This document shows, one piece after another, positions 1-44,892 of a DNA stretch of 64,000 nt. The stretch's first letter is position 1. Each line of letters starts with the position of its first letter. The position numbers were made by a program, and so were the translations under genes. The DNA is from Haliotis rubra (taxonomy: Eukaryota). The stretch covers positions 372,001-436,000 of the forward strand of contig NW_025765592.1 in the NCBI RefSeq assembly GCF_003918875.1, written 5' to 3'. The notes below the pieces were generated by a model. That model searched no databases. It saw only the letters and a list, made by a program, of their open reading frames with translations, and was not told the DNA's origin.

Positions 1-1841
1 TGAGTGCCCTTCATCTTCAACTGATGCAGAGATATATGAGTGCTTGAAGACAGTAGATGCACAAACTATGGCAGACCTTCAGCTAGGTTTGTTCGGTGAA
101 GGAATTGCATTTCGTCCAGTTGTGGATGGGTACTTCCTCCCCGATGACCCCAAAATTCTTCTGTCCACTGGCTCCATCAAGCAGACCAGTGTATTGCATG
201 GTTTTACTAAAGATGAGACAGCACTGTTTTCTGCAATGATATTGAAGCAGATGAGAAACGTATCAACATTACCTGAATCACTCATTTTAAGTCGTCAAGA
301 ATATGATAATTTTATTTCATTTGACATGCTCACTGGAACAGACATTGAAGAGCCTATTCGTCTGTTTTATGAAAGTCAGATACCCCTTCTAAAGGACACG
401 GACTATTTAGAGGTCGTAACTCGTGCAACTTCAGACAGGGGATTTAAGTGTCCTCATCTTGAGTTTGACAGATTATATTCTCCTGCTAACCCTACCTATG
501 TCTACAGCTTTAATCATCGACTGTCAATTAGTCCGTATCCAAAGTGAATGGGAGCACCCCACTGGTACGAGCTTGACTTTGTTTTTGGTTGGGTTCTGGA
601 AAAGTCTCTGGGATGTACAGAGGAGGAGATGGAACTCAGCAGGACCATCATGACGTACTGGACCAACTTTGCCAAGTCCGGGTGAGTGAGTGACTGAATG
701 AGCGAATGAAATATACATTCAATGATAAAAACGTTTTACTAAGTCACCCTTCTTTAAATTATACCACAGATAAATGTGTATAAAATAATCATGATTTCTT
801 GATGTTTTCTTATGTGTATCCAGCGATCCAAACGCTCCTGTCCCCGTCAAGGTGAACTGGCCAGCCTCTGACAACACTGATCTCTCCTACATGGCCCCTT
901 GACGTGGGCAGCAAATTAGCAGCAGGACATGGGGTAGTCCACCATGAATGTGTCTTCATCAACAGGATTCTACCCATGATTTCTAAAGGTAAATCTATAA
1001 TGGTACATTGGTTCCTGGTACACATAAATGAATATTTTTAGAAGTGACTTGGATACTTCTCTTGTTTGGTTGAATATTTACGATGATAAGTAATGTTGTT
1101 GATTTTCTTTAATTATCACGAATGGTTGGAACAGACTCGTTTATATTGGTAGTTGTTGATTCTCAAGTTAAAACAAAATAGTTAACAGGGAATCAGTCTG
1201 TACGAGAATTGTGTGTGAAATTGAGAAACAAAAAAGATGTAATTAAACATTGTATTTCTTAAATTGTAAAGTCGCAAATCAATACAAAGACTTCACTTTG
1301 GGAGAGTGAGTGAGTGAGTTTAGTTTTACGCCCACACTCTGTAATATATGGCGGCGGCCAGTAAATAATCAAGTCTGGACCAGACAATCCAGTGATGAGC
1401 ATCGATCTACACAACTGGGATACGATGACACACTTTGGCAGAACAAAATAGAGTGGCAGTACAAAGTCAGAGGTATAATATAACAGCAGTGATTGTAGAA
1501 ATAAAGACAATGATGGTCATAGTGACCTGTCAGCAATAGAAATTCAACTTGGAAGAAAGGGCCAGGCAGAGAGTAAACAAAGTTTAAAGTGACCACTCAC
1601 AATACTGGTCTTCTTGTGACTCGAGATGTGATGTGAGATGAAAGGCAATAGCTAAGTAAGATTCACTGACTGAATCTACAGGTACAAAGTATACCTTGAA
1701 ACATTGTTGCACAACGTTTAACACCGCCTCATGGCAGCATGTTCATGCCAATATGTTCCATAGTGCAGCTATGGAAATTATGAATTCATGGTTGTGTTTC
1801 AGACCCACCGGAGGGGGCAGGAGTACTGCACAAGAGGATGA
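1..1841 (+). pseudogene. Cholinesterase-like copy A, 5'-truncated by the window edge (exons <1-681, 824-988, 1803-~1841); disrupted as assembled
   Basis: Near-identical to copy D at offset 27147. TGG>TGA at 545-547 just before the catalytic-His motif; +1 C at 895-898 and +1 G at ~1813-1817 in homopolymers. GT-AG boundaries match the other copies. Confidence 0.8.
1305..1432 (-). mobile_element. 3' fragment of SINE family 1 in intron 3 (same insertion at ~28449-28575 and ~36010-36136)
   Basis: Matches the tail of full copies (gagtgagtttagttttacgcc...ctggaccagacaatccagtgat). Confidence 0.75.
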
Positions 1842-2563
1842 AAGGACAGCATCATACTAATCTGACCCAAGTTAAAATACTGATACATCATTAACTTTTA
1901 AAGCTGTTTTGAACTGTATCTGGAGTCCCAACAGATATTGTGATGCTGTTTATACAGCTTAACCGCCAATCACAGTCACTTCCACAATCACCCGACCACA
2001 GCCAATACACCTTTCAGACTTCGTGGAATAATTGTGTTGTTCCTCATGGTTTCATGTTGAATCTATTTTATATACTGCGGCAAGTAAGTGATCTGGTAGA
2101 TACGTTATCGACTGAGGCAAGTCAATTGGCATATGTGTGGTAGTTGCATTGGTAACCCGATTTTACGTATCATATTTGCATTGTTAAGTGTAATTATGTA
2201 TACGATATCTACACTGACTAGTCAACTGGCACAGTTGCTATCTTCTCATACAAGTCAACTGCTATACACGTGAGTCGACTATACGAGTAGGTCAGCTGGT
2301 CTACAGAGGTGCATTGCCTGGATATGACAACATAAAGATATGGTGTAAACGTATTTAAAAAACATTTTTCACACCAAGTAACCCATGAAGATCTGGGTCA
2401 TAAGAGACGATGAAACGGATCGTGTGGGTGCATCACCGTATCCCATTTAACATGGGTACATGTTCATGATGTCAATCACTGGATGATTGGTCCACAGACC
2501 TCAACCACCACGACTCCCACAAAATTTGGAAATATGACAACTGCTAGTCTAGACTGTGGACGC

Positions 2564-6070: not shown

Positions 6071-6167
6071 GCATGTCACGCTAACCAGGTCATATCACTG
6101 GTGTAACAGCGTCTGTGTGTACACCCCAGTGCAGTGTCCACAGTACAACTGTAGAGTCAGGTACAAG
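6071..6167 (+). promoter_or_regulatory. Conserved putative promoter / non-coding exon 1 of copy B (donor AAG|gtgagt at 6167/6168)
   Basis: Block conserved upstream of B, C, D, E and F and ends in a consensus donor. Exon 2 starts with an acceptor 1 nt before the ATG, so an upstream exon is needed. The transcription start is unknown. Confidence 0.65.
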
Positions 6168-7277
6168 GTGAGTGTCTAATGAAAAATGGTATTGTTGTCC
6201 ATCAAATACCGTTGACGTATATATACTTGTCGAAATATAGGTAATGGCTAGCAGTGTTGTTACTCCAACAGTTTTGTTGAGTCAGATTCAGGGTGAGTTG
6301 AAAAATACAAGTGTTGTCCTTCAAAACCGTTGACGTTTATACCAGTGATTGTTCTTTATCTTTGAGGATTCAGTATAGAAGGACCTGTGTATTACTTACT
6401 CTTACCCGGAGACATTCATGTTGTTTACAAGCGATTGTTCTTTTTAAAGTGGCAGTTACACCTTCATGATTCTACTAGTAGACCTGTGTATTACTTACTC
6501 TTACCCGGAGACATTCATGTTGTTTACAAGCGATTGTTCTTTTTAAAGTGGCAGTTACACCTTCATGATTCTTGTCAATTTCATTGTGTAGTTTGTCTAA
6601 TCAATATAAATACTTTCGGATGCGCCTCTGTTCAGTCAGAAACACAGGGGTGCCGTTAAGGAATAGATTGTAATGTGACTGTGAACCGTATTCAGTTTAC
6701 CTAAGAATGAAAATTAATGGCAGATTAATCCACAGACGAGGCCATAAAATTCACCAACCGTTTGACAATCTTGACCGCTGTGTCTCTTTTACATACAATG
6801 AAGTCATGTCTACCACGTCACCATACTTAACTTTCCAAATTGTATGTCTGTGTATTTCCTGTTCCACCATCACCGTTACAGTTCTTCAATGTAATTACAA
6901 TGCCAGTACGAAATATAATGGCAGAGGTGACAACAAAGTCAATGATAAATAATAATTCCCACATCAGCAACAGTGCTCAAGCTTCCAAAACAGACTTATA
7001 CTAAATATCCGGGGTGAAAAGATGATGTTCACAGAATGATGGACACCGCTGTCCTCACGTGACAATCTCAACATTGTTTTCCTGCTTTACACAGCCATAT
7101 TACACGTACACAGACATATTGTTCTACTGATTTACACAGCAATATAACACGAACCATCTTGGTTATTAGTGTCACATTTCATGTGTAAAGAAACTGTGAT
7201 TAACTAGGAACATGAACTGAAAAGGATCAAACGTTCAACTGTAAATCGTATCTTAAAATTCAATATCTTCTTTCAGA

Positions 7278-10005
7278 ATGTGGACAGGAATGAGACTTGC
7301 ATTTGCGACGCTTGTTACGTTATTGCTGGTGTTGCCTACTGTGAAAACAAAGGAAGTGTCAACTCTGAATGGCCCACTTCTAGGACAACGTCTGTCAGTG
7401 TTGGGCAAGTCTCTTTGACGTATTCTATGGAATTCCATATGCCAAGCCTCCTGTAGGTGATCTCCGCTTCAAATACCCTCAGCCTTCAGAGTCATGGGGA
7501 CCGGAAGTTAGAGATGCACAAAACCCGACGCCATCTTGCTTCCAACCAAAAAATGCTCATGGCACTGATGAAAGTTACAAACAGATGCCCGATGATTACA
7601 GTGAAGACTGCCTTCACCTTACAGTGTGGGCGCCATCAGCCAATGCTGGCAATCTGGCAGTCATGGTCTGGATCCACGGCGGAGCTTTTTATATTGGATC
7701 TACAAGACTGCCACTGTATGAAGGAAAATACATTGCAGCAGAGAATGACGTCATCGTTGTTTCAATGAATTACAGATTGGGGCCTCTAGGGTTCAGTTAC
7801 CTTGGTCCAGATACCATCCCTGGAAATATGGGCTTGGTGGATCAAAGATTAGCCTTACAGTGGGTGAAAGACAATATTGCCAACTTTGGTGGAGATCCAA
7901 CCCGAGTCACCATATTTGGAGAAAGTGCTGGTGGTGCAAGTGTAGGTCTACACCTGGCATCACCTTTGTCACGTGACCTGTTCGACAGAGCAATCACACA
8001 GAGTGGGACCCTCACTTGCCCGTGGGCTTACACTTTTCCCAACACAGCAAAACAGAAACTGAAGAGATTTGCCAATCTCCTTGAATGCCCTTCATCTTCA
8101 ACTGATACAGAGATATATGAGTGCTTGAAGACAGCAGATGCACAAACTATGGCAGACCTTCAGCTAGGTTTGTTCGATGAAGGAATTCCATTTCGTCCAG
8201 TTGTGGATGGGAACTTCCTCCCCGATGACCCCAAAACTCTTCTGTCCACTGGCTCCATCAAGCAGACCAGTGTATTGCATGGTTTTACAAAGAACGAGAT
8301 GACTCTGTTTTCTGCACTGACATTGAAGCAGATGAGAAAAGTATCTGCATTACCGGAAACATTGATTTTAAGTCGCACAGAATATGAAAGTCTTAAGTTT
8401 AGCATTGGGAAATGTGGACGGAATCGAAGAACCTCTTCGCCTCTTTTATGAAAGTCAGAAAGCCCCCCCCTGAAAGAAAAAGACTATTTTGATGTCGTGA
8501 CTCGAGCGAGTACGGATAAGGCAATGAAGTGTCCTCATCTTGAGTTTGACAGATTGTACTCTCCTGCCAACCCTACCTACGTGTACAGTTTTAATCACCG
8601 ACTATCAGTTAGTCCGTTTCCACAGTGGATAGGAGCAGCCCACTGGTACGAGCTTGACTTTGTGTTTGGTTGGGTCCTGGAAAAGTCTCTGGGATGTACA
8701 GAGGAGGAGATGGAACTCAGCAGAACCATCATGACGTACTGGACCAACTTTGCCAAGTCAGGGTGAGTGAGTGAGTGGTACATATGACTTATTGAGTCAA
8801 TGATCGCCCTCAAACTTTTAAGACCTCTTAATCCTGAAAGAACAGCACAAAACACAAAGGAAACAACTTCTATCATTTTCATGTGTACAATGTCCAGAGA
8901 CCATTTATGTTGTCCACTGGCGTTTTCAAAATGTGTCAAAAACCTATTTCACCCTCTCCAATTAACATGATACCAAACCCGTGGAGATCCGGTTTAGAAT
9001 TGGTCTTCAGCAACTCATGTTTGTCGTAAGAGGAGACTAACGGGATCGGTTGGTCAGGCACGATGACAAGGTTGAAAATTGTCATTGTATACCACTGCAT
9101 AGCTCAATGTTCATGCTATTGATCACTGGATTATCTGGACCAGGTTCAATTAATTACAAATCGCCACCATACCATATAGCTGGAATATTGCTGAGTGTGG
9201 TGTTAAACAACAAATGAACCAAACAAACAAATAAACAAAACATCCTAGAACTCTTTTATTTACAGGAACCCGAACACTCCTGTCCCCGTCAAGGTGAACT
9301 GGCCAGCCTCTGACAACACTGATCTCTCCTACATGGCTCTTGACGTGGGCAGCAAATTAGCAGCAGGACACGGGGTAGTCCACCACGAATGTGTCTTCAT
9401 CAACAAGATTGTCCCCATGATTTCTAAAGGTAATGTTCATGATGGATAGTTAAATGGGAATGGTCGGGACCGACAGGTATTTCGAGTTATGCATAATATT
9501 CGAGACGCCGGCAGTCGACTCATCGGGATTTGACTGTAGTTGAATGGTTTCAGATGTGAATAGTTTCTCAAGTGATTATGATACTTATGTATACCAATAC
9601 GTCCATACTGATCCACGGATACTGATTGGTTCGTGTCAACATGTTCATGCCCATATGTTAATGCTGATACCATCATGTTGATATGTTCGTAATGTTACCT
9701 TTATACCAATACGTTCATGCGGACATGTTCCTGCCCATATGTGTAGTCATCTCAGTGTTGAGCCTTGTTTCATGAAAGAAGTTTTACCCCCAACTCACTC
9801 AACTTTTCACTATAACCATCGCTGGAAGACGTATGAGTTAATACAAAAGGCACCTTTGTTTGTAACCAGATGGCAACAGCCCCTCCCCATGTCACGCCTG
9901 GTTTATCGTTGTGGATATTACACTGACTGTAGCACGGCAAATAATGAGTCCATTTAATGCTTTTCAGATCCCCCTGAAGGGCAGGAGTACTGCACGAGAG
10001 GATGA
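7278..10005 (+). CDS. Cholinesterase-like carboxylesterase copy B (exons 7278-8762, 9266-9429, 9968-10005); frameshifted in this assembly
   Basis: Signal peptide, GIPYAKPP, SEDCL, HGGAF, GESAG, KNE, GAAHWYE and tail DPPEGQEYCTRG*. Indels at ~7414 (ttt), ~8408 (ggg) and ~8463 (C8). Confidence 0.85.
8977..9240 (+). mobile_element. SINE family 1, full length, in intron 2 of copy B
   Basis: Head cccgtggagatccgg...gtcgtaagaggagactaacggg; tail gctggaatattgctgagtgtggtgttaaac plus (aaac)n. Confidence 0.8.
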
Positions 10006-10043
10006 AAGGACAGCATCACAATAATCAGACCTTGAGGAACATA

Positions 10044-16024: not shown

Positions 16025-16188
16025 NNNNNNNNNNNNNNNNNNNNNNNNNNNNNNNNNNNNNNNNNNNNNNNNNNNNNNNNNNNNNNNNNNNNNNNNNNNN
16101 NNNNNNNNNNNNNNNNNNNNNNNNNNNNNNNNNNNNNNNNNNNNNNNNNNNNNNNNNNNNNNNNNNNNNNNNNNNNNNNNNNNNNNNN
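16025..16188. other. Assembly gap in intron 1 of copy C
   Basis: Run of N. Confidence 1.
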
Positions 16189-16778: not shown

Positions 16779-19307
16779 ATGGCAGCAGCAATGAAAATTG
16801 CGCTTGTTACGCTAGTGGCGGTCTTGCATATTGCAAAACACAGAAAGTGTCAACTGAAGATGGCCCACTTCTTGGACAACGTCTGTCACTGTTGGGCAAG
16901 TCCCTTGACGTATTCTATGGAATCCCATATGCCAAGCCTCCTGTAGGTGATCTCCGCTTCAAGCACCCCCAACCTTCAGAGTCATGGGGACCGGATGTTA
17001 GAGATGCACAGAAACCAACGCCATCTTGCATTCAACCTGAAGATGTATTCACATCTCCAGAGGTTTACAGACAGGTCCCGGATGATACCAGTGAAGACTG
17101 CCTTCATCTTACAGTGTGGGCGCCATCAGACAATGCTGGCAATCTGGCAGTGATGGTCTGGATCTACGGGGGAGGTTTCTATTTTGGATCTTCACGAATG
17201 CCACTATATGAAGGAAAATATCTTGCAGCAGAGAATGACATCATCGTTGTTTCAATGAATTACAGACTGGGGCCATTAGGGTTCAGCTATCTGGGGCCAG
17301 ATACCATCCCTGGAAACATGGGCTTGATGGATCAACGACTTGCCTTACAGTGGGTGAAAGACAACATTGCCAACTTTGGTGGAGATCCATCTCGGGTGAC
17401 AATATTTGAGAAAGTGCTGGTGGTGTCAGCGTAGGACACCACCTGGTGTCACCATTGTCACGTGACTTATTTCAGAGAGCCATCATGCAGAGCGGATCCC
17501 CGAATTTCCCATGGGCTTACACTTTTCCACACACAGCAAAACGGAAATTGAAGCAGTTTGCTGATCTCCTTGGATGCCCGTCATCTTCAACTGATGCAGA
17601 GATCTATGACTGTGTAAAGAAAGCAGATGCTCAAACTATGGCAGACCTTCAGCTTAGTGATTTGTTAGATGAAGGACTTGCATTTGGTCCAGTTGTGGAT
17701 GGGCACTTCCTCCCCAATGACCCCAAACTCTTCTGACCACCGGTTCCAACAAGCAGGCTAGTGTAATGCATGGTTTTACTAAAGACGAGTTAACATTGTC
17801 TATAGCAGTTGCTTTGAAGCAGATGAGAAACATATCTTCATTACCGGAAACATTGATTTTAAGCCGCACAGAGTATGAAAGTTTTCTTTCCTATGATAGA
17901 ATAGGTGGTAAAGGATTTGAAGAGCCTCTTCGCCTGTTTTATGAAAGTCAAACATCCCTCTTAGGGACACTCACTATTTGGATGTCATGACTCGCATGAT
18001 GTCAGATAGGGATTTCAAGTGTCCTCATCTTGAGTTTGACAGATTGTACTCTCCTGCCAACCCTACCTACGTGTACAGTTTTAATCACCGACTATCAGTT
18101 AGTCCGTATCCAAAGTGGATAGGAGCAACCCATTGGTATGATGTTGAGTTTGTGTTTGGTTTGGTCCTGGAAAAGTATCTGGGATGTACAGAGGAGGAGA
18201 TGGAACTCAGCAGGACCATCATGACCTATTGGACCAACTTTGCCAAGTCAGGGTGAGTAATAGAGTGCAATTGAGAGTGTGAGTGAGTGGCGAGTGATAG
18301 TGTGAGTTGGACAGAGTAAGTGAAAAATCGAGTCATGGAATTACGCAGGTTAATAGTCTCGGAACAGATGAGCGAGTGAGTGAGAGATCCCTCACTCGGT
18401 CTTATATTATTGTTCTTTACATGTTCAAACAATTTCACCTCAGATAAAAATTGATTCCCATTTCCAAACAGATCGATTTGTATTGTTTTCTTGAAGCTTT
18501 CATATCTTTATACAGCAACCCTAACACTCCTGTCCCCGTCAAGGTGAACTGGCCAACCTCTGACAACACTGATCTCTCCTACATGGCTCTTGACGTGGGC
18601 AGCAACTTAGCAGCGGGACACGGGGTAGTCCACCACGAATGTGTCTTCATCAACAGGATTCTACCCATGATTTCTAAAGGTAATGTGTTGTTATGATGGG
18701 ATGTCGCTTGTTGCAATTACACATATTTGAATGTAGCTGTGTCTAAAACACTCAAAAACAGATCGATATGTCAAAGGAAGCATAGTTTTGTCTTTCCATT
18801 CCAAGTCAAGTCTCTCTTGGCTTCCATACGATTTTCCAAACACCAGTAAAATATGTGCCTCCTCCTTGGTCATGGTTTGACAATGACTTCTTAATGCGAA
18901 ATCATGGAAAATGCGTATTACCCCACATCAATAATGGCTGTGGTTTTAACCAAAGGCAATTACAGACACAAAGAATACCCAGCGTATCAGGTGCTATACA
19001 GTGACGTAATGTATATGGAAAACAACCATAGAACATGTGTAACGAGGAAGACTTCAACTATTGCCAATTGCGTTCAGGACTTCTCCCAGATTTAATTATT
19101 TGCTTGTCGTCATCGTATCCAGCTCCCTGATTTCATAAAGCTGTGAATGTCTGGAACCCACATCACGTTTTGTTTGCCAACCAGTTAAGAACACGCCCAC
19201 TCGTGTCTGTCTTGCTGTAGTGTTGCTGGAGCAGCCAGGGAAGTTATGAATCATATTGTTGTGTTTCAGACCCACCGGAAGGGCAGGACTACTGCACCAA
19301 AGGATGA
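16779..19307 (+). CDS. Cholinesterase-like copy C, the most divergent paralog (exons 16779-18252, 18516-18679, 19270-19307); frameshifted in this assembly
   Basis: YGGGF, [G]ESAGGVS, QSGSPNFPW, KDE, GATHWYD and tail DPPEGQDYCTKG*. Four -1 indels at ~16836, ~17407, ~17726 and ~17965, all in mononucleotide runs. Confidence 0.85.
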
Positions 19308-22420: not shown

Positions 22421-22489
22421 TAAATAAAATAAATCCAAATAGGATTGCCAGTCACCAACATTCATGCTGTTTACACACGTGTCTATAAT

Positions 22490-26345: not shown

Positions 26346-28984
26346 ATGTGGACAGGAATGAAACTTGCATTTGCGACGCTTGTGACGTTGTTGCTTGAGT
26401 TGCATGTTGCAAAAACACAGAAAGTGTCAACACTAAATGGCCTCTTCTAGGACAACGTCTGTCAGTGTTGGGCAAGTCCCTTGACGTATTCTATGGAATC
26501 CCATATGCCAAGCCTCCTGTAGGTGATCTCCGATTCAAGCACCCTCAACCTTCAGAGTCATGGGGACCGGAAGTTAGAGATGCACAAAAACCGACGTCAT
26601 CTTGCTTCCAACCAAAAAATGCTCATGGCAGTGATGAAAGTTACAAACAGATGCCCGATGATTACAGTGAAGACTGCCTTCATCTTACAGTGTGGGCGCC
26701 ATCAGACAATGCTGGCAATCTGGCAGTGATGGTCTGGATCCACGGTGGAGGTTTTTATATTGGATCTACAAGACTGCCACTGTATGAAGGAAAATACATT
26801 GCAGCAGAGAATGGAGTCATCGTTGTTTCAATGAATTACAGATTGGGGCCTTTAGGGTTCAGCTACCTTGGTCCAGATACCATCCCTGGCAACATGGGCT
26901 TGGTGGATCAAAGATTAGCCTTACAGTGGGTGAAAGACAATATTGCTAACTTTGGTGGAGATCCAAAACGGGTGACCATATTTGGAGAAAGTGCTGGTGG
27001 TGCAAGTGTAGGTCTACACCTGGCATCACCGCTGTCACGTGACCTGTTTGACAGAGCAATAATGCAGAGTGGGACTCTCATCTCCCTATTTGCAGACCAC
27101 ATGCCCAAAACAGCAATACGGACACTGAAGAGACTTGCTGATCACCTTGAGTGCCCTTCATCTTCAACTGATACAGAGATATATGAGTGCTTGAAGACAG
27201 TAGATGCACAAACTATGGCAGACCTTCAGCTAGGTTTGTTCGGTGAAGGAATTGCATTTCGTCCAGTTGTGGATGGGTACTTCCTCCCCGATGACCCCAA
27301 AATTCTTCTGTCCACTGGCTCCATCAAGCAGACCAGTGTATTGCATGGTTTTACTAAAGATGAGACAGCACTGTTTTCTGCAATGATATTGAAGCAGATG
27401 AGAAACGTATCAACATTACCTGAATCACTCATTTTAAGTCGTCAAGAATATGATAATTTTATTTCATTTGACATGCTCACTGGAACAGACATTGAAGAGC
27501 CTATTCGTCTGTTTTATGAAAGTCAGATACCCCTTCTAAAGGACACGGACTATTTAGAGGTCGTAACTCGTGCAACTTCAGACAGGGGATTTAAGTGTCC
27601 TCATCTTGAGTTTGACAGATTATATTCTCCTGCTAACCCTACCTATGTCTACAGCTTTAATCATCGACTGTCAATTAGTCCGTATCCAAAGTGGATGGGA
27701 GCACCCCACTGGTACGAGCTTGACTTTGTTTTGGTTGGGTTCTGGAAAAGTCTCTGGGATGTACAGAGGAGGAGATGGAACTCAGCAGGACCATCATGAC
27801 GTACTGGACCAACTTTGCCAAGTCCGGGTGAGTGAGTGACTGAATGAGCGAATGAAATATACATTCAATGATAAAAACGTTTTACTAAGTCACCCTTCTT
27901 TAAATTATACCACAGATAAATGTGTATAAAATAATCATGATTTCTTGATGTTTTCTTATGTGTATCCAGCGATCCAAACGCTCCTGTCCCCGTCAAGGTG
28001 AACTGGCCAGCCTCTGACAACACTGATCTCTCCTACATGGCCCTTGACGTGGGCAGCAAATTAGCAGCAGGACATGGGGTAGTCCACCATGAATGTGTCT
28101 TCATCAACAGGATTCTACCCATGATTTCTAAAGGTAAATCTATAATGGTACATTGGTTCCTGGTACACATAAATGAATATTTTAGAAGTGACTTGGATAC
28201 TTCTCTTGTTTGGTTGAATATTTACGATGATAAGTAATGTTGTTGATTTTCTTTAATTATCACGAATGGTTGGAACAGACTCGTTTATATTGGTAGTTGT
28301 TGATTCTCAAGTTAAAACAAAATAGTTAACAGGGAATCAGTCTGTACGAGAATTGTGTGTGAAATTGAGAAACAAAAAAGATGTAATTAAACATTGTATT
28401 TCTTAAATTGTAAAGTCGCAAATCAATACAAAGACTTCACTTTGGGAGAGTGAGTGAGTGAGTTTAGTTTTACGCCCACACTCTGTAATATATGGCGGCG
28501 GCCAGTAAATAATCAAGTCTGGACCAGACAATCCAGTGATGAGCATCGATCTACACAACTGGGATACGATGACACACTTTGGCAGAACAAAATAGAGTGG
28601 CAGTACAAAGTCAGAGGTATAATATAACAGCAGTGATTGTAGACATAAAGACAATGATGGTCATAGTGACCTGTCAGCAATAGAAATTCAACTTGGAAGA
28701 AAGGGCCAGGCAGAGAGTATACAAAGTTTAAAGTGACCACTCACAATACTGGTCTTCTTGTGACTCGAGATGTGATGTGAGATGAAAGGCAATAGCTAAG
28801 TAAGATTCACTGACTGAATCTACAGGTACAAAGTATACCTTGAAACATTGTTGCACAACGTTTAACACTGCCTCATGGCAGCATGTTCATGCCAATATGT
28901 TCAATAGTGCAGCTATGGAAATTATGAATTCATGGTTGTGTTTCAGACCCACCGGAGGGGCAGGAGTACTGCACAAGAGGATGA
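26346..28984 (+). CDS. Cholinesterase-like copy D (exons 26346-27827, 27970-28133, 28947-28984); two frameshifts in this assembly
   Basis: 444-aa ORF with HGGGF, GESAG, KDE and GAPHWYE. -1 indels at ~26441 (cc) and ~27730 (T4 where the paralogs A and E have T5). Confidence 0.88.
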
Positions 28985-32682: not shown

Positions 32683-32779
32683 GCATGTCACGCTAACCAG
32701 GTCATATCACTGGTGTAACAGCGTCTGTGTGTACACCCCAGTGCAGCGTCCACAGTACAACTGTAGAGTCAGGTACAAG
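32683..32779 (+). promoter_or_regulatory. Putative promoter / non-coding exon 1 of copy E
   Basis: Near-identical to 6071-6167; AAG|gtgagt donor. Confidence 0.65.
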
Positions 32780-33849
32780 GTGAGTGTCTAATGAAAAATG
32801 GTATTGTTGTCCTTCAAATACCTTTGACGTTTATATACTTGTTGAAATATAGGTAATGGCTAGCAGTGTTGTTACTCCAACAGTTTATCTTTGAGGATTC
32901 AGTATGGATATACCTGCATACAAGAAGGACTGTATAATACTTACTCTTACCCGGAGACATTCATGTTGTTTACAAGCGATTGTTCCTTTTAAAGTGGCAG
33001 TCACACCTTCATGATATTCTGTTCAATTTCATGGTGTAGTTTGTGTTATCAATATAAATACTTTCGGATGCGTCTCTGTTCATTCAGAAACACAGGGGTA
33101 CCGTTAAGGAATAGATTGTAATGTGACTGTGAACCGTATTCAGTTTACCTAAGAATGAAAATTAATGGCAGATTAATCCACAGACGAGATCATAAAATTC
33201 ACCAACCGTTTGACAATCTTGACCGCTGGGTCTCTTTTACATACAATGAAGTCATGTCTACCACGTCATCATACTCAGCAAAGTCTATGCATTCTGTTCT
33301 AAACCAGCAACGTCTAGTCAAGATTCCTTTATCATCATCATAAGATTTACACCCATCATAACAGCTTTCAAAAGACTGTAGACAGATCCAAGAAATCTTC
33401 AAGCATTATTCTGACTGTGACGTCATGTCTACCACGTCACCATACGTAACCTTCCAAATTGTATCTCTATGTATTTTCTGTTCCACCATCACCGCTACAA
33501 TTCTTCAATGTAATTACAATCGCAGTACGAAATACAATGGCAGAGGTGACAACAAAGTCAGTGATAAATAATATTCCCACATCAGCAACAGTACTCAAGC
33601 TTCCAAAACAGACGTATACTAAATATCCGAGGTGAAAAGATGATGTTCACAGAATGCTGGACACCACTGTCCACAAGTAACAATCTCAACATCATTATCC
33701 TGCATTAAACAGTGATATCACACGAACCATCTTGGTTATTAGTGTCACATTTCCTGTGTAAAGAACTGTGATTAATTAGGAACATGAATTGAAAAGGATC
33801 AAAGGTTTAACTGTAAATCGTATCTTAAAATTCGATATGTTCTTTCAGA

Positions 33850-36800
33850 ATGTGGACAGGAATGAGACTTGCATTTGCGACGCTGGTGACGTTGTTGCTG
33901 GTGTTGCCTACTGTGAAAACAAAGGAAGTGTCAACTTTAAATGGCCCACTTCTAGGACAACGTCTGTCAGTGTTGGGCAAGTCCCTTGACGTATTCTATG
34001 GAATCCCATATGCCAAGCCTCCTGTGGGTGATTTTCGCTTCAAGCACCCTCAGCCTTCAGAGTCATGGGGACCGGAAGTAAGGGATGCACAAAACCCGAC
34101 GCCATCTTGCTTCCAACCAAAAAATGCTCATGGCAGTGATGAAAGTTACAAACAGATGCCCGATGATTACAGTGAAGACTGCCTTCATCTTACAGTGTGG
34201 ACACCATCAGAAAATAGTGGCAATCTAGCAGTGATGGTCTGGATCCACGGTGGAGGTTTTTATATTGGATCTACAAGACTGCCACTGTATGAAGGAAAAT
34301 ACATTGCAGCAGAGAATGGAGTCATCGTTGTTTCAATGAATTACAGATTGGGGCCTTTAGGGTTCAGCTACCTTGGTCGAGATACCATCCCTGGCAACAT
34401 GGGCTTGATGGATCAAAGATTAGCCTTACAGTGGGTGAAAGACAATATTGCCAACTTTGGTGGAGATCCAACACGGGTGACCATATTTGGAGAAAGTGCT
34501 GGTGGTGCAAGTGTAGGTCTACACCTGGCATCACCTTTGTCACGTGACCTGTTTGACAGAGCAATAATGCAGAGTGGGACTCTCATCTCCCCATTTGCAG
34601 ATAACATGCCCAAAACAGCAATACGGACACTGAAGAGACTTGCTGATCTCCTTGAATGCCCTTCATCTTCAACTGATACAGAGATATATGAGTGCTTGAA
34701 GACAGCAGATGCACAAACTATGGCAGACCTTCAGCTAGGTTTGCTCGGTGAAGGAATTCCATTTCGTCCAGTTGTGGATGGGAACTTCCTCCCCGATGAC
34801 CCCAAAAGTCTTCTGTCCACTGGCTCCATCAAGCAGACCAGTGTATTGCATGGTTTTACTAAAAATGAGACAGCACTGTTTTCTGCAATGATACTGAAGC
34901 AGATGAGAAACGTATCAACATTGCCGGAAACACTCATTTTAAGTCGTCAAGAATATGATAATTTTATTTCATTTGACATGGTCACTGGAACAGACATTGA
35001 AGAGCCTATCCGTCTGTTTTATGAAAGTCAGATACCCCTTCTAAAGGACACTGACTATTTTGATGTCGTGACTCGCGCAACTTCGGATAGGGATTTCAAG
35101 TGTCCTCATCTTGAGTTTGACAGATTGTACTCTCCTGCTAACCCTACCTATGTCTACAGCTTTAATCACCGACTATCAATTAGTCCGAATCCAAAGTGGA
35201 TGGGAGCACCCCACTGGTACGAGCTTGACTTTGTTTTTGGTTGGGTTCTGGAAAAGTCTCTGGGATTTACAGAGGAGGAGATGGAACTCAGCAGGACCAT
35301 CATGACGTACTGGACCAACTTTGCCAAGTCCGGGTCAGTGAATGAATGAGCGAATGAAATATACATTCAATGACGAAAACGTTGTATTAAGTCACCCTTC
35401 TTTAAATTATACCACAGATAAATGTCTAAAATAATCAAGATTTCTTTAAGCTTTCTTATTTGTATCCAGCGATCCAGTAATTTTAAATGATACCAAATAT
35501 ATCATACAGTTTCAAATCTGTATCCAGCGATCCGAACGCTCCTGTCTCCGTCAAGGTGAACTGGCCAGCCTCTGACAACACTGATCTCTCCTACATGGCC
35601 CTTGACGTTGGCAGCAAATTATCAGCAGGACATGGGGTAGTCCATCACGAATGTGTCTTCATCAACAGCATTCTACCCATGATTTCTAAAGGTAAATTTA
35701 TAATGGTACATTGGTTCCTGATACACATAATTAAATGTTTTTTAGATGTGACTTGGATACTTCTCTTGTTTGGTTAAATATTTACGATGATAAGTAATGT
35801 TGTTGTTTTTCTTCAATTATCACGAATGGTTGGAACTGACTCGTTTATATTGGTAGTTGCTGATTCTCAAGTTAAAACTATATAGTTAACCGGGACTCAG
35901 TCTGTAAGAGAATTATGTGTGAAACTAAGAAACAAAAAAGATGTAATTAAAAATTGTATTTCTAAAATTGTAAAGTCGCAAATCAATACAAAGACTTCAC
36001 TTTGGAAGAGTGAGTGAGTGAGTTTAGTTTTACGCCCACACTCTGTAATATATGGCGGCGGCCAGTAAATAATCAAGTCTGGACCAGACAATCCAGTGAT
36101 GAGCATCGATCTACACAACTGGGATACGATGACACACTTTGACAGAACAAAATTGAGTGGCAGTACAAAGTCAGAGGTATAATATAACAGTAGTGATTGT
36201 GGGAGTAAAGACAATGATGGTTATAGTGACCTGTCAACAACAGAGGTATAATATAACAGTAGTGATTGTAGGAGTAAAGACAATGATGGTCATAGTGACC
36301 TGTCAACAACAGAGGTATAATATAACAGCAGTGATTGTAGGAGTAAAGACAATGGTGGTCATAGTGACCTGTCAACAACAGAGGTATAATATAACAGCAG
36401 TGATTGTAGGAGTAAAGACAATGATGGTCATAGTGACCTGTCAGCAACAGAGGTATAATATAACAGCAGTGATTGTAGGAGTAAAGACAATGATGGTCAT
36501 AGTGACCTGTCAGCAACAGAGGTATATATAACAGCAGTGATTGTGAGTAAAGACAATGGTGGTCATAGTGACCTGTCAGCAACAGAGGTATAATATAACA
36601 GCAGTGATTGTAGGAGTAAAGACATGGTGGTCATAGTGACCTGTCAGCAACAGAGGTATAATATAACAGCAGTGATTGTAGGAGTAAAGACAATGGTGGT
36701 CATAGTGACCTGTCAGCAACAGAGGTATAATATAACAGCAGTGATTGTAGGAGTAAAGACAATGGTGGTCATAGTGACCTGTCAGCAACAGAGGTATAAT

Positions 36801-37445
36801 ATAACAGCAGTGATTGTAGGAGTAAAGACAATGGTGGTCATAGTGACCTGTCAACAACAGAGGTATCATATAACAGCAGTGATATAAAACAGCAGTGACC
36901 TGTATGGTGGTCAAGACAAGTGACCTGTCAGCAACAGAGGTATAATATAACAGCAGTGATTGTAGGAGTAAAGACAATGGTGGTCATAGTGACCTGTCAG
37001 CAACAGAGGTATAATATAACAGCAGTGATTGTAGGAGTAAAGACAATGGTGGTCATAGTGACCTGTCAGCAACAGAGGTATAATATAACAGCAGTGATTG
37101 TAGGAGTAAAGACAATGATGGTCGTAGTGACCTGTCAGCAATAGCAATCCAACTTGGAAGAAAGGGCCAGGCAGAGAGTAAACAAAGTTTAAAGTGAACA
37201 CTCACAATACTGGTCTTCTTGTGACTCGAGATGTGATGAGAGATGAAAGGCAATAGCTAAGTAAGATTCACTGACTGAATCTACAGGTACAAAGTATACC
37301 TTGAAACATTGTTGCACAACGTTTAACACCGTCTCATGGCAGCATGTTCATGCCAATATGTTCCATAGTGCAGCTATGGTAATTATGAATTCATGGTTGT
37401 GTTTCAGACCCACAGGAGGGGCAGGAGTACTGCACAAGAGGATGA
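33850..37445 (+). CDS. Cholinesterase-like carboxylesterase copy E, intact, 561 aa (exons 33850-35333, 35528-35691, 37408-37445)
   Basis: Signal peptide; triad Ser (GESAG, 34495), Glu (KNE, 34867), His (35212); GGGF oxyanion loop; three cholinesterase-type Cys pairs. Spliced length 1686 nt is in frame. Confidence 0.93.
36172..37142. repeat. 69-bp minisatellite, ~14 units, in intron 3 of copy E
   Basis: Period 69 (36172 to 36241); single-copy at the same site in A and D. Confidence 0.95.
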
Positions 37446-41520: not shown

Positions 41521-42436
41521 GTGAGTGTGTGATGATCAATGACATTCTGTTTTCCATCAAATACCATTCACGTATACGATTGTCGAAATTTAGGTAATGA
41601 CTAGCAGTGTTGTTACTCTAACAGTTTATCTTTGAGGATTTAGGTTGAATATGCTTGCATACATATAGGCATGTGTATTACCTGCTCCTACCCGGAGACC
41701 TTCATGTTGTTTACAAGCGATTGTTCCTTTTAAAATGGCAGTTACACTTTCATGAATTATGTTAATTACATGGTGTTTGTGTTCGTGTCAACGTTAAATT
41801 TACCCCCATTCATTAAGACCATCTGTAAATTCAATGTCTTATAGTTATATAGTTGCCCATATGCATATGAATCTCAGCTACCTAACCGTTCATCAACGTT
41901 TTTTCGAGTCTGTCTCAAAACTACCTTGATCAGAGTTAAATTTGTCGAAAGGCTGTAGGCCCGTGGAATTTGAAATTTGCAGTCATTCTGATTGTGACGT
42001 GATGTCTACCACGTTACCATACTTAGCCTTCCAAATGGTATGTCTGTGTGTTCTGTTCCACCACCTGTTACGCAGCTTCATTGAGTTACAATTCCAGTAC
42101 GATGTACAATGGCAGAGGTGACAACAAAGTCAGTGATAAATAATATTCCCTCATCAGAAGCAGTGCTCGCGTTTTTAAAATACGATGTTCGTAGATGTTC
42201 ACAGAATGCTGGACACCACTGTCCACAAGTAACAATCTCAACATTGTTGTCCTGCATCATACAGCCATATCACACGAACCATCTTGGTTATAAGTGTCAC
42301 ATTTCATGTGTAAAGAAACTGTGGAACATGAATTGAAATGGATGAAAGGTTCAACTGTAAATAGTATCTGAACTAGGAACATGAACACAGAAGGAACAAA
42401 AGTTCATCTGTAAAATGTATCTTATTTTTTTTCAGA

Positions 42437-44892
42437 ATGTGGACAGGAATGAGACTTGCATTTGCGACGCTTGTGGCGTTGTTGCTGGTGCTGCCTACTG
42501 TGAAAACAAAGGAAGTGTCAACTCTGAATGGCCCACTTCTAGGACAACAACTGTCAGTGTTGGGCAAGTCTCTTGACGTATTCTATGGAATCCCATATGC
42601 GAAGCCTCCTGTAGGCGATCTACGCTTCAAGTACCCTCAGCCTTCAGAGTCATGGGGACCGGAAGTAAGGGATGCACAAAACCCGACACCATCTTGCTTC
42701 CAACCAATAGGTGCTCATGACACACCTGAGAAGCACAAACAGATGCCCGATGATTACAGTGAAGACTGCCTCCATCTTACAGTGTGGGCGCCATCAGACA
42801 ATGGTGGCAATCTGGCAGTGATGGTCTGGATCCACGGTGGAGGCTTCTATTTTGGATCTACAAGGCTGCCACTGTATGAAGGAAAATACCTTGCAGCAGA
42901 GAATGACATCATCGTTGTATCAATGAATTACAGATTGGGGCCTTTAGGGTTCAGCTACCTCGGGCCAGACACCATCCCTGGCAACATGGGCTTGATGGAT
43001 CAAAGATTAGCCTTACAGTGGGTGAAAGACAATGTTGCCAACTTTGGTGGAGATCCAACCCGAGTCACCATATTTGGAGAAAGTGCTGGTGGTGCAAGTG
43101 TAGGTCTACACCTGGCATCACCTCTGTCACATGACCTGTTTGACAGAGCAATCACACAGAGTGGGACCCTCACTTGCTCATGGACATACACGGTGCCCAA
43201 AACAGCAAAAGGAAAATTGAAGAGATTTGCTGATCTCCTTCAATGCCCTTCATCTTCAACTGATACAGAGATATATGATTGCTTGACGTCAGCAGACGCT
43301 CAAACTATGGCAGACCTTCAACTTGTTTTGCTAGATGAAGGAATACCATTTCCTCCAGTTGTGGATGGGTACTTCGTCCCCGATGACCCCAAAGCTCTTC
43401 TGTCCACTGGCTCCATCAAGCAGACCAGTGTATTGCATGGTTTTACTAAAGATGAGACAACACTGTTTTCTGCAATGACTTTGAAACGTTCCCTGAGAAA
43501 CGTATCCACATTACCTGAATCACTGATTTTAAGTCGTCAAGAATATGATAGTTTTCTTTCATTTGACATTGTCACTGGAAAGGACATTGGAGAGCCTATT
43601 CGTCTGTTTTATGAAAGTCAGATACCCCTTCTCAAGGACACTAACTATTTAGATGTCGTAACTCGTGCAACTTCAGACAGGGGATTTAAGTGTCCTCATC
43701 TTGAGTTTGACAGATTGTACTCTCCTGCCAACCCTACCTATGTCTACAGTTTTAATCGCCGACTGTCAGTTAGTCCAAATCCACAGTGGATGGGAGCACC
43801 CCACTGGTACGAGCTTGACTTTATGTTTGGTTGGGTCCTGGAAAAGTCTCTTGGATGTACAGAGGAGGAGATGGAACTCAGCAGGACCATCATGACCTAC
43901 TGGACCAACTTTGCCAAGTCCGGGTGAGTGAATGAATGAATGAGCGAGTGAAATGGTATTATTTTAAATGACATCATGTACATGATACTAAACAGAACGA
44001 TCAATATTTTCTTTCAAATATTCAAGATTTACTGAAGTTTTCGTATCTATATACAGCAATCCGAACGCTCCTGTCCCCGTCAAGGTGAACTGGCCAGCCT
44101 CTGACAACACTGATCTCTCCTACATGGCCCTTGACGTGGGCAGCAACTTATCAGCAAGACATGGGGTAGTCCATCACGAATGTGTCTTCATCAACAGGAT
44201 TCTACCCATGATTTCTAAAGGTAATGTTGTTATGATGGGATATCAGTTTTTAACAGTTACATGCAATACATGTATTGATGTTGAAATCGCTTAACGGAAT
44301 ACCGTAATTTCATTTCAGTATGGTCCAATCAAGTGGTTCATTCCAAAATTGTCATAATGCTATAATGCCAGTATGTCTGTGCCATGTACCCATTAAGAGT
44401 TTTCTCAGAATGTTCATGTTAATTTCAAAATGTCACTACTGATATGCATGGCCCTTACAGTTTGATCGCAGAGATCATTTCTAGTGTCTGTGCTTCTCCT
44501 GCCTGAGACGATATGCTCCTAGAGGCAGTGGGGTAGCCTAGTGGTTTAAACGTTTGCTCGTCATGCAGAAGACCCAGGTTCAATTGCCCACATGGGTACA
44601 ATGTGCAGAGTCCATTTCTAGTGTCCCCCGCCATGATATTGCTGGAATCTTGCTAAAAGCGGTGTAAAACCATACACACTCTCTCCCTCACTCACTCACT
44701 CACATTTATGCTACTAGTAAATAACTGTAACAATAAAAGGGCAACAATACCCAACATGATCGACTGAAGTCTGCAAATTGTTGAGAATGTACATTGTTTG
44801 TTCATGATACAAACGTGCAGCCAGGGAAATCATGAATTTATCCTTGTTTTTCAGACCCACCGGAAGGGCAGGAGTATTGCACAAAAGGATGA
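42437..44892 (+). CDS. Cholinesterase-like carboxylesterase copy F, intact, 562 aa (exons 42437-43923, 44057-44220, 44855-44892)
   Basis: Signal peptide, HGGGF, GESAG, KDE, GAPHWYE and tail DPPEGQEYCTKG*. Spliced length 1689 nt is in frame. Confidence 0.93.
44522..44703 (+). mobile_element. tRNA-derived SINE family 2 in intron 3 of copy F
   Basis: A box tagcctagtgg, B box ggttcaattgc, (cact)n tail. Confidence 0.85.

What the first reader, a model, noticed from the sequence alone, without database searches (positions are those of the whole stretch)
1..44892. Six-gene array of secreted AChE-fold esterases whose differences cluster in the active-site gorge
Seen: six same-strand paralogs with identical exon structure and nearly invariant scaffold segments. 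They differ in the omega loop (FQPKNAHGSDESYKQM / IQPEDVFTSPEVYRQV / FQPIGAHDTPEKHKQM), the oxyanion loop (GGGFYI / GGAFYI / GGGFYF), the W233-equivalent segment (TLISLF / TLISPF / TLTCPW / TLTCSW / SPNFPW), the acyl loop (GLFGEGIAFR / GLFDEGIPFR / DLLDEGLAFG / VLLDEGIPFP), the residues after the catalytic Glu (ETALF / EMTLF / ELTLS / ETTLF), the segment before C402 (ATSDRGF / ASTDKAM / MMSDRDF) and the residue before His (P/A/T). Established: these segments shape substrate specificity in cholinesterases. Inference: a lineage-specific esterase repertoire under diversifying selection, for example for dietary or defensive esters or chemosensory signal clearance, that automated annotation would mislabel as AChE.
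Basis: partly seen in the sequence, partly recalled or inferred. Interest (0 to 1): 0.75.

Follow-up and report, generated by a model that had tools for sequence, protein, structure and literature searches.

The report
Abalone cholinesterase-like esterase gene array
This is half of a 12-copy tandem array of secreted, cholinesterase-derived esterase genes in the blacklip abalone; only two of the six copies in the window are intact, and the copies differ most in the loops around the substrate pocket, but that variation does not reach the level that would show positive selection.

Summary
The window is Haliotis rubra scaffold C702:372001-436000. All six same-strand COesterase copies, their shared three-coding-exon structure and every quoted motif are present as described.

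Four things change the picture:
- **Array size.** The array has 12 copies (315.7-416 kb). It includes a ~27-kb three-gene unit repeated three times at 97-99% identity.
- **Integrity.** Only E and F are intact. A and D are one pseudogene lineage, with a frameshift at codon 33 shared by three copies; A also has a TGA. B and C are near-identical twins of intact upstream genes and are broken only by homopolymer-length indels.
- **Selection.** Pocket-forming segments are more variable than the rest (67% vs 45% of sites; omega 0.48 vs 0.20 in other loops). Gene-wide omega is 0.34, and no robust omega>1 class was found. Rubra-asinina orthologues give omega 0.26 (pocket) and 0.16 (rest). Gene conversion makes the genes mosaics.
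- **Identity.** They are not acetylcholinesterases. The catalytic triad and oxyanion hole are kept, but the choline-binding Trp84 is gone, the omega loop is 3 residues shorter and the acyl loop 4 shorter.

RefSeq names them "cholinesterase-like". This is a lineage-specific expansion of a known kind, of moderate interest.

The parts
1..1841 (+). Copy A (D-type), 3' part only; pseudogene
   Evidence: Main exon 1-681 (starts upstream of the window at C702:371199), exon 2 824-988, exon 3 1803-1841. TGA replaces Trp codon 450 at 545-547. +1 C in exon 2 near 895 and +1 G in exon 3 near 1815, relative to D. Shares the -1 at codon 33 with D and G4.
7278..10005 (+). Copy B (B-type); broken twin of the intact G2 at C702:324376
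   Evidence: Exons 7278-8762, 9266-9429, 9968-10005. Against G2 the main exon has 7 substitutions and three homopolymer indels: +1 at 7412 (codon 46), +1 near 8400 (codon 376), and +2 in a C-run at 8462 (codon 395, shared with G5). G2 is identical to RefSeq protein P0002.
16025..16188 (.). Assembly gap (164 N), outside coding sequence, upstream of C
   Evidence: Flanks are collinear with unit beta, with a 163-bp unaligned interval there. Letters were not looked up or filled.
16779..19307 (+). Copy C (C-type); broken twin of the intact G3 at C702:334500
   Evidence: Exons 16779-18252, 18516-18679, 19270-19307. Against G3 it has 4 substitutions and four 1-bp homopolymer deletions at 16834, 17407 (inside the GESAG catalytic-Ser motif), 17724 and 17958. 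G3 is identical to RefSeq P0021.
26346..28984 (+). Copy D (D-type); pseudogene lineage
   Evidence: Exons 26346-27827, 27970-28133, 28947-28984. The -1 at 26443 (codon 33) is shared with A and G4, so it predates the 27-kb triplication. A further -1 at 27728 (codon 462). RefSeq model P0005 (482 aa) follows the shifted frame and has no signal peptide.
33850..37445 (+). Copy E; intact gene
   Evidence: Exons 33850-35333, 35528-35691, 37408-37445. The 495-codon main exon is open. Catalytic residues are Ser216, Glu340 and His455. Phe stands at the Trp233 position. The donor is GTCAGT where the other five copies have GTGAGT.
42437..44892 (+). Copy F (F-type); intact gene
   Evidence: Exons 42437-43923, 44057-44220, 44855-44892. 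87% identical to E. It has an H. asinina orthologue, P0004, with omega 0.11-0.12.
6094..6168 (+). Candidate upstream (5') exon of B
   Evidence: Matches residues 4-28 of the N-terminal extension in RefSeq isoform P0003 at 96%. An equivalent stretch lies at 32706-32780 upstream of E.
32706..32780 (+). Candidate upstream (5') exon of E
   Evidence: Consistent with the splice acceptor directly before the ATG.

Best explanation
The window holds the downstream half of a 12-copy, same-strand tandem array of cholinesterase-lineage type-B carboxylesterase genes in the abalone Haliotis rubra.

**The protein.** Each gene encodes a ~560-residue protein. It has an N-terminal signal peptide, an intact Ser-Glu-His triad, an oxyanion hole, three disulfide pairs, and a short hydrophilic tail with a Cys four residues from the end. 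There is no membrane anchor. The product is most likely a secreted, soluble serine esterase, possibly disulfide-linked as a dimer.

**Likely substrates.** The choline-binding Trp84 is absent. The omega loop is 3 residues shorter and the acyl loop 4 residues shorter than in cholinesterases. Trp279, Phe330 and Trp432 are replaced, and a Trp follows the catalytic His. I therefore infer that these enzymes hydrolyse non-choline esters.

**Paralogue types.** The copies fall into five sequence types: B, C, D/A, E and F. The types differ mainly in the pocket-forming loops, so they probably differ in substrate range. The B, C and F types have H. asinina partners at dS about 0.34, so at least these predate that species split; since then they have been held under purifying selection. 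Gene conversion has exchanged segments between types.

**State of the copies in the window.** E and F are intact. The D/A type is a pseudogene lineage. B and C are very recent copies of intact upstream genes, inside a 27-kb unit present three times. They are disrupted only by homopolymer-length indels, which are either fresh decay or consensus errors of the long-read assembly.

**Shown versus inferred.** Shown: family, fold, residues, array structure, lesions, rates. Inferred: secretion, non-choline substrates, different specificities, tissue of action.
For: - **Family and fold.** Pfam PF00135 at E = 4e-139. The best solved relatives are BChE and AChE at E = 1e-112 to 1e-104. An AlphaFold model of the intact twin P0002 has pLDDT 91.9 and TM 0.87-0.92 to Torpedo AChE and human BChE.
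- **Residue mapping onto Torpedo AChE.** Kept: S200=S216, E327=E340, H440=H455, G118/G119/A201, W114, Y121, Y130, Y442. Changed: W84 to Gln, W279 to Leu, F330 to Leu, W432 to Asn/Tyr/Phe, G441 to Trp.
- **Loop lengths.** None of 25 close-family proteins has a Trp in its 25-residue omega loop; 52 of 53 proteins from other animals have a 28-residue loop with a Trp. The acyl loop is 12-13 residues against 16.
- **Array.** 12 copies and a 27-kb unit repeated three times.
- **Lesions.**
- **Age of the types.** Eight rubra-asinina sister pairs in the protein tree. Three orthologue pairs give omega 0.11-0.43 at dS about 0.34.
- **Rates.** Omega 0.34 overall; 0.48 in pocket segments against 0.20 in other loops.
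- **Gene conversion.** E vs G2 has pS 0.00 in codons 276-335 and about 0.5 in codons 336-411. Max-chi2 permutation gives p<0.0005. G2 groups with L015 at bootstrap 100 in that segment.
Against: - No expression, secretion or activity data were available.
- The signal peptide is read by eye only, as a hydrophobic stretch at residues 7-19.
- Pocket segments were defined from my knowledge of cholinesterase structure, not from 3D distances. The tools return no model coordinates.
- H. asinina partners of the F, B and C types lie 0.6-1.6 Mb apart on one chromosome, so orthology may be blurred by gene conversion.
- Part of the array (units beta and gamma) may be an assembly artefact.
Confidence: 0.62

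Rival explanations
1. One reading: the paralogues are under pervasive or episodic positive (diversifying) selection on gorge residues, widening the substrate range for dietary, defensive or signalling esters.
For: - Pocket segments carry more variable sites and a higher omega (0.48; acyl loop 1.0; omega loop core 0.8) than other loops (0.20).
- The best single-site candidates lie in or next to the pocket: E306 at the acyl-loop end (p = 0.01), E454 before the catalytic His, and E253.
- A codeml-like test without synonymous-rate variation gives 2dlnL 6.99, with about 2% of sites at omega 2-2.5.
- Omega in pocket segments is higher on internal branches (0.75) than on terminal ones (0.51).
Against: - No test that allows synonymous-rate variation is significant (2dlnL 1.6-2.4).
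- 2-4 sites at p<0.05 among 489 codons is within chance.
- Omega = 1 is rejected, on the low side, for pocket segments on internal branches (p = 0.04).
- Orthologues show omega 0.26 in pocket segments, and the F-type 0.11.
- Gene conversion produces false positives in single-tree site models.
Confidence: 0.17
2. Neutral reading: the loop differences reflect only relaxed constraint on flexible loops in redundant duplicates, plus patchwork gene conversion. The paralogues are functionally interchangeable and many are decaying.
For: - Omega stays at or below 1 everywhere.
- Four of the six window copies, and 7 of the 12 array copies, are disrupted.
- The same segments also evolve about twice as fast between orthologues.
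- The omega and acyl loops are the most variable parts of this superfamily in general (own knowledge).
Against: - At least 14 paralogues keep fully open main exons, with 107-110 codons under significant purifying selection.
- Type-specific pocket motifs are retained across species. The F-type differs from H. asinina P0004 at 4 of 51 segment positions, with omega 0.11 in the a-priori pocket segments.
- Pocket loops are faster than other loops of the same protein, not merely as fast.
Confidence: 0.25
3. Assembly-artefact reading: one or two of the three 27-kb units (and so copies A-D of the window) are false duplications or unpolished long-read consensus. If so, the frameshifts in B and C, and some in A and D, are not biological.
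For: - The units differ by only 0.4-2.3% in substitutions but carry many 1-bp indels.
- In the main exons, C differs from G3 by 4 substitutions and 4 indels. B differs from G2 by 7 and 3, and G5 from G2 by 5 and 4. All are homopolymer-length changes.
- That indel-to-substitution ratio is far above usual mutation spectra (own knowledge).
- The genome's statistics (1.378 Gb, 2855 contigs) fit the published nanopore-hybrid assembly (own knowledge).
- An assembly gap sits inside unit gamma.
Against: - The -1 at codon 33 is shared by all three D-type copies together with an adjacent substitution, so it is inherited.
- The +2 C-run change is shared by G5 and B.
- A carries a nonsense substitution, not an indel.
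- E, F, G1, G2 and G3 in the same array have no indels at all.
- The units differ by real substitutions at a transition:transversion ratio near 1:1.
Confidence: 0.3

Closest known systems
Vertebrate butyrylcholinesterase and acetylcholinesterase (e.g. human BChE 1p0i/6emi, Torpedo AChE 2w6c/1ea5)
   Same: - Closest solved relatives: E = 1e-112 to 1e-104, about 38-42% identity, TM 0.87-0.92.
- Same Ser-Glu-His triad, oxyanion hole, Glu199, three disulfides and overall gorge architecture.
- Secreted glycoprotein format.
- A C-terminal Cys that in cholinesterases makes the inter-subunit disulfide.
   Different: - No Trp84 (Gln instead); omega loop 25 residues, not 28.
- Acyl loop 4 residues shorter, so F288 and F290 are not both present.
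- W279 to Leu, Y70 to Pro, F330 to Leu, W432 to Asn/Tyr/Phe, G441 to Trp.
- No tryptophan-amphiphilic tetramerisation peptide and no GPI signal.
- Only about 5-6 of the 14 gorge aromatic residues are kept.
[quoted passage not shown]
   Same: A gastropod lineage-specific expansion of AChE-like genes (21 transcripts in three clades). Several are secreted by the mucous gland and are abundant in mucus. The authors propose a role as an organophosphate bioscavenger.
   Different: A different gastropod order. Orthology to the Haliotis clade was not tested here. That study has transcript and proteome data but no genomic array. Here there is genomic structure but no expression data.
Arthropod and nematode carboxylesterase expansions (insect alpha/beta-esterases, tick AChE-like genes, C. 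elegans cest genes)
   Same: Tandem arrays of PF00135 genes, with pseudogenes, gene conversion, and variation concentrated around the acyl and alcohol pockets. They are associated with detoxification, pheromone or hormone clearance, or metabolite assembly (own knowledge; PMC2784812 and PMC7641594 surfaced).
   Different: Those families sit in other clades of the superfamily. The abalone genes branch with true cholinesterases. Their closest non-Haliotis hits are named AChE/BChE-like, at 39-45% identity.
Neuronal AChE of abalone (H. discus hannai, 599 aa, PMC9189711)
   Same: Same superfamily and same genus. It has a signal peptide and a COesterase domain.
   Different: That gene is 599 aa, expressed most highly in the cerebral ganglion and tied to acetylcholine levels. 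The array genes are 555-565 aa and lack the choline-binding Trp.

Membership tests
Type-B carboxylesterase / COesterase (Pfam PF00135) | Profile match above the curated threshold | tested here: met
   E: 465 bits. F: 451 bits. Cut-off is 27 bits.
Type-B carboxylesterase / COesterase (Pfam PF00135) | Catalytic Ser (GESAG), Glu and His, plus oxyanion-hole Gly-Gly and Ala | tested here: met
   S216, E340, H455, G135-G136 and A217 in E and F, aligned to Torpedo S200, E327, H440, G118, G119 and A201. The B-type has Ala at the G119 position. In this assembly C's GESAG motif is hit by a 1-bp deletion.
Type-B carboxylesterase / COesterase (Pfam PF00135) | Alpha/beta-hydrolase fold with the cholinesterase-type disulfides | tested here: met
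   The AF2 model of the intact twin P0002 has pLDDT 91.9 and TM 0.87-0.92 to AChE/BChE. Cys87/111, Cys270/282, and Cys418 with the exon-2 Cys are all present. The fold was run on P0002, not on a joined E or F model.
True acetylcholinesterase / cholinesterase (EC 3.1.1.7/8) | Choline-binding Trp84 in the omega loop | tested here: not met
   Gln aligns to W84. No Trp occurs anywhere in the omega loop in any of 25 family proteins, against 52 of 53 proteins of other animals.
True acetylcholinesterase / cholinesterase (EC 3.1.1.7/8) | Acyl pocket F288/F290 (AChE) or L286/V288 (BChE) on a full-length acyl loop | tested here: not met
   The acyl loop is 12-13 residues against 16. A 4-residue gap covers I287-F290 or F290-V293, depending on the alignment. 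At most one Phe (F305) is retained.
True acetylcholinesterase / cholinesterase (EC 3.1.1.7/8) | Peripheral-site and gorge aromatic residues (Y70, Y121, W279, F330, F331, Y334, W432, Y442 and others) | tested here: not met
   Kept: W114, Y121, Y130, F331 (Ser in the C-type), Y442, and W233 (Phe in E and D). Lost: Y70, W84, W279, F330, W432, and probably Y334. The residue list comes from my own knowledge of Torpedo AChE.
True acetylcholinesterase / cholinesterase (EC 3.1.1.7/8) | Hydrolysis of acetyl- or butyrylcholine, with eserine sensitivity | not testable with these tools
   Needs recombinant enzyme assays.
Gene family under pervasive diversifying selection | A class of codons with dN/dS>1 supported by a likelihood-ratio test that is robust to recombination and synonymous-rate variation | tested here: not met
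   2dlnL is 2.4 on a single tree and 1.6 when partitioned. Only the alpha=1 variant reaches 6.99. These are my own FEL/FUBAR-like implementations on 14 paralogues, not codeml or HyPhy.
Non-catalytic cholinesterase-like adhesion proteins (neuroligin, gliotactin, neurotactin) | Loss of the catalytic Ser, plus a C-terminal transmembrane segment | tested here: not met
   The catalytic Ser is present. The tail after the domain is a 12-residue hydrophilic peptide ending CT(R/K)G.

The most novel reading that the evidence does not exclude
A Haliotis-specific radiation of cholinesterase-derived secreted esterases rebuilt the substrate pocket: Trp84 lost, a Trp placed next to the catalytic His, and shortened omega and acyl loops. 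It then partitioned ester substrates among paralogue types through short bursts of adaptive change after duplication. Gene conversion acted as a module shuffler, recombining pocket segments between arrays. For example, codons 336-411 of the B-type, which include the acyl-pocket position before Cys402, come from a donor like L015 on another scaffold. If so, the array would be a combinatorial generator of esterase specificities, not a set of slowly drifting duplicates.
Probability: 0.15. Interest if true: 0.55.

Novelty: new member of a known kind. Interest (0 to 1): 0.3.

Why it matters
Cholinesterase activity is a routine pollution biomarker in molluscs. Abalone are farmed and are exposed to organophosphates and algal toxins. 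A genome with dozens of secreted cholinesterase-like esterases that cannot bind choline in the usual way complicates both gene annotation ('AChE-like') and the reading of such assays.

The family is also a natural set of pocket variants on a cholinesterase scaffold, and could inform bioscavenger or esterase engineering.

For genome curation, the result flags two things: a 27-kb triplicated unit whose copies differ mostly by homopolymer indels, and RefSeq fragment models that derive from them.

As evolutionary biology it is an ordinary birth-and-death tandem family with gene conversion.

Tried and rejected
- **Reads.** So neither the reality of the frameshifts nor expression could be tested.
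- **3D clustering.** Structure prediction returns confidence and secondary structure but no coordinates. I replaced distance-to-Ser with a-priori pocket segments and used secondary structure as a loop control.
- **Independent protein evidence for intact B or C.** The listing of cluster members returned only RefSeq models from the same assembly, including fragment models of 146-403 aa from the broken copies.
- **RefSeq models P0002 and P0021.** I first took them for frame-corrected models of B and C. They are in fact exact translations of the intact upstream twins G2 and G3.
- **Literature.** Searches for abalone or Haliotis with cholinesterase-like or acetylcholinesterase-like terms gave nothing on this family.
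- **Earlier scan notes.** A word search on esterase terms was blank.
- **Synteny with H. asinina.** The partners of the F, B and C types are not adjacent; they lie at 16.7, 17.7 and 18.3 Mb on one chromosome. I did not use synteny to claim orthology.
- **Equal-omega test for non-pocket sites.** It gave a significant statistic with identical omega estimates. I treat it as optimiser noise and do not use it.
- **Joined spliced models.** Exon 1 was searched by reference. Exons 2 and 3 were located by motif. The full-length RefSeq protein P0002 stood in for the fold.
- **Non-catalytic adhesion-protein reading.** Rejected, because the catalytic Ser is present and there is no transmembrane tail.

Full report
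**What is there.**
The window is Haliotis rubra scaffold C702:372001-436000. tblastn with the open reading frame of copy E finds six copies on the + strand: A 2-694 (cut by the window start), B 7278-8775, C 16823-18265, D 26346-27840, E 33850-35346 and F 42437-43936. E and F match Pfam COesterase PF00135 at E = 4e-139 and 7e-135.

The gene structure is the same in all six:
- a splice acceptor directly before the ATG, which implies an upstream non-coding exon (candidates at 6094-6168 and 32706-32780);
- a main exon of about 1484 nt ending at a conserved GG|GT(G/C)AGT donor;
- a 164-nt exon 2;
- a 38-nt exon 3 encoding DPPEGQEYCT(R/K)G and the stop codon.

**The gap.**
The N stretch at 16025-16188 lies about 590 bp upstream of C's ATG (16779) and outside all coding exons. 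Its flanks align in the same order and orientation to the paralogous unit upstream. The offset is 26999 before the gap and 27015 after. The unaligned interval there is 163 bp, against 164 N. The two sides are therefore consistent with being continuous.

**The array is larger and is built from a higher-order repeat.**
A six-frame search of the whole assembly, followed by fetching C702:300-372 kb, shows 12 copies between 315.7 and 416 kb, spaced roughly 7.5-10 kb apart.

| Copy | Position on C702 | Type | State |
|---|---|---|---|
| G1 | 315683 | F-type | intact |
| G2 | 324376 | B-type | intact |
| G3 | 334500 | C-type | intact |
| G4 | 344393 | D-type | broken |
| G5 | 352216 | B-type | broken |
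| G6 | 361762 | C-type | broken |
| A | 371199 | D-type | broken |
| B | 379278 | B-type | broken |
| C | 388823 | C-type | broken |
| D | 398346 | D-type | broken |
| E | 405850 | E | intact |
| F | 414437 | F-type | intact |

- A ~27-kb unit of [B-type, C-type, D-type] occurs three times at 97-99% identity.
- The six window copies therefore represent five sequence types. A and D are the same type.
- Genome-wide there are roughly 35-40 loci at 63% identity or more. They lie on scaffolds C702, C2209, C2539, C1375, C2166 and C645.
- At least 14 of them have a fully open main exon.
- More distant tiers sit at 44-54% and 36-43% identity.

**Integrity.**
Only E and F are intact in the window.

| Copy | Lesions |
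|---|---|
| D-type (G4, A, D) | -1 at codon 33 with an adjacent substitution, shared by all three copies, so inherited and older than the triplication |
| A | additionally TGG to TGA at codon 450 (545-547), and +1 homopolymer insertions in exons 2 and 3 |
| D | additionally -1 at codon 462 |
| B | against its intact twin G2: 7 substitutions and three insertions (T2 to T3, G2 to G3, C6 to C8) |
| C | against its intact twin G3: 4 substitutions and four 1-bp deletions, one inside the GESAG motif |

- No nonsense substitution occurs in B, C or D.
- An indel-to-substitution ratio near 1:1, made up entirely of homopolymer-length changes, is not what ordinary mutation produces. It is what unpolished long-read consensus produces in near-identical repeats.
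- The shared lesions, and the clean state of five neighbouring copies, argue that not everything is error.
- RefSeq proteins P0002 and P0021 look like repaired versions of B and C. They are exact products of G2 and G3.
- RefSeq annotates the broken copies as fragments and models D as a 482-aa protein in the shifted frame.

**What kind of protein.**
- The closest solved structures are butyryl- and acetylcholinesterases: E = 1e-112 to 1e-104 and about 40% identity.
- An AlphaFold model of P0002 (pLDDT 91.9) superposes on Torpedo AChE and human BChE at TM 0.87-0.92.
- In the alignment to Torpedo AChE, the triad (S216, E340, H455), Glu199, the oxyanion hole and the disulfide cysteines are conserved.
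- W84 aligns to Gln, Y70 to Pro, W279 to Leu, F330 to Leu, and W432 to Asn/Tyr/Phe.
- G441 is Trp in every window copy where the codon is read and in 17 of 25 family representatives.
- W233 is Phe in E and D.
- All 25 close-family proteins from four Haliotis species have a 25-residue omega loop without any Trp. 52 of 53 proteins from other animals have a 28-residue loop with a Trp.
- The acyl loop is 12-13 residues against 16.
- The proteins start with a hydrophobic signal-like segment and end in a short hydrophilic tail with a Cys. They have no anchor.

They are therefore catalytically competent serine esterases of the cholinesterase lineage that fail the defining tests for a cholinesterase.

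**Is the variation concentrated in the gorge, and is it adaptive?**
*Concentration.*
Those segments were chosen for being variable, and 75% of differences lie outside them.
- I then defined pocket segments a priori from cholinesterase structure (own knowledge): the omega loop, the oxyanion loop, and the regions around Torpedo residues 199-201, 228-237, 279-294, 327-335, 396-401 and 430-444.
- In 14 intact H. rubra paralogues, these are variable at 67% of sites against 45% elsewhere. Omega is 0.48 against 0.20 in other loops (classified from the model's secondary structure) and 0.37 in helices and strands.
- So the enrichment is real.

*Selection.*
- Pairwise omega is 0.24-0.44 and M0 omega is 0.34.
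- A FEL-like test finds 107-110 codons under purifying selection and only 2-4 with beta>alpha at p<0.05: E306 in the acyl loop, E382, E444, and E454 before the His.
- A FUBAR-like mixture gains only 2dlnL 1.6-2.4 from allowing beta>alpha.
- Only the variant that ignores synonymous-rate variation is marginal: 2dlnL 6.99, with sites E253 and E306.
- Pocket segments have omega 0.75 on internal branches and 0.51 on terminal ones. Omega = 1 is rejected on the low side at p = 0.04.
- The protein tree shows eight rubra-asinina sister pairs. Three of them were checked at codon level at dS about 0.34. Omega is 0.26 in pocket segments and 0.16 elsewhere; the F-type gives 0.11 and 0.12.

*Gene conversion.*
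- E and G2 have no synonymous differences in codons 276-335 and pS of about 0.5 in codons 336-411. Permutation gives p<0.0005.
- In that segment G2 groups with L015, from another scaffold, at bootstrap 100.
- Some 'gorge' differences, such as the B-type motif before Cys402, were therefore imported as blocks.

**Reading.**
The best-supported account is a birth-and-death tandem family of secreted, cholinesterase-derived esterases.
- The paralogue types are old.
- They are kept by purifying selection.
- They are distinguished mainly by faster-evolving pocket loops.
- They are reshuffled by gene conversion.
- Recent segmental copies are broken or mis-assembled.

Different substrate ranges among the types are plausible but remain inferred. 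Positive selection is not excluded for a few sites, but it is not demonstrated.

The nearest published parallel is the expanded AChE-like family secreted into the trail mucus of Theba pisana (PMC12094768). The neuronal AChE of abalone is a different, 599-residue gene (PMC9189711). I found no open paper describing the Haliotis expansion.

**Limits.**
- My selection tests are home-made implementations on one species' paralogues, with branch lengths fixed.
- Pocket segments come from homology and memory, not from measured distances.
- There are no expression or activity data.
P0002 served as the full-length proxy.

Noticed in passing
G000:C702:323.3-404 kb (window 1-32000 is its last third): A ~27-kb higher-order unit [B-type, C-type, D-type esterase genes plus intergenic repeats] is present three times in tandem at 97-99% identity. 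The copies differ by 0.4-2.3% in substitutions and by unusually many 1-bp homopolymer indels.
   Followed up: partly
window 34108-35220 (E codons 102 and 456): The residue after the catalytic His (Torpedo G441) is Trp in 17 of 25 family proteins, against Gly in 52 of 53 proteins from other animals. Trp84 and Trp432 are lost. This agrees with the earlier scan note s1-339716 on a possible 'Trp migration'.
   Followed up: partly
window 35334-35527 and 35460-35480: E's exon-1 donor is GTCAGT, where the other five copies have GTGAGT. Its intron 1 also contains a short duplicate of the acceptor region. The database protein for E (P0001, 499 aa) is the read-through open reading frame without exons 2-3, so E's splicing deserves an RNA check.
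   Followed up: no
window 3609-4885 and 30803-31492; 12405-13672; 19428-20473; 22464-23341; 36073-37201; 52509-53218: Several minisatellite-like tandem repeats lie in intergenic and intronic DNA. Their periods are roughly 20/60, 94, 57 and 69 bp, judged from self-alignment offsets. They create long spurious open reading frames. The 69-bp array sits in E's intron 2 and lengthens it to 1.7 kb.
   Followed up: no
window 10838-11543 (-), 46321-46989 (-), 49897-50418 (+): Open reading frames that resemble Tc1/mariner-type transposase remnants. One lies between B and C; two lie downstream of the array (not searched against families).
   Followed up: no
window 55734-57483 vs 59515-61263: An inverted repeat of about 1.75 kb at 92.7% identity, downstream of the array.
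   Followed up: no
window 45403-45818 and 45938-46142: Two further assembly gaps just after the end of F. They lie outside the finding and were not examined.
   Followed up: no
G000:C1375 (52.9-kb contig): Holds about five further copies at 74-98% identity to E, several in pieces. RefSeq proteins from it are flagged LOW QUALITY. It may be a haplotig or an unplaced piece of the same array.
   Followed up: no
L039-L041 (H. asinina CM074538.1, 16.7-18.3 Mb): The H. asinina partners of the F, B and C types lie 0.6-1.6 Mb apart on one chromosome, not in a 9-kb-spaced array. A second family gene lies head-to-head about 10 kb from the C-type partner.
   Followed up: partly
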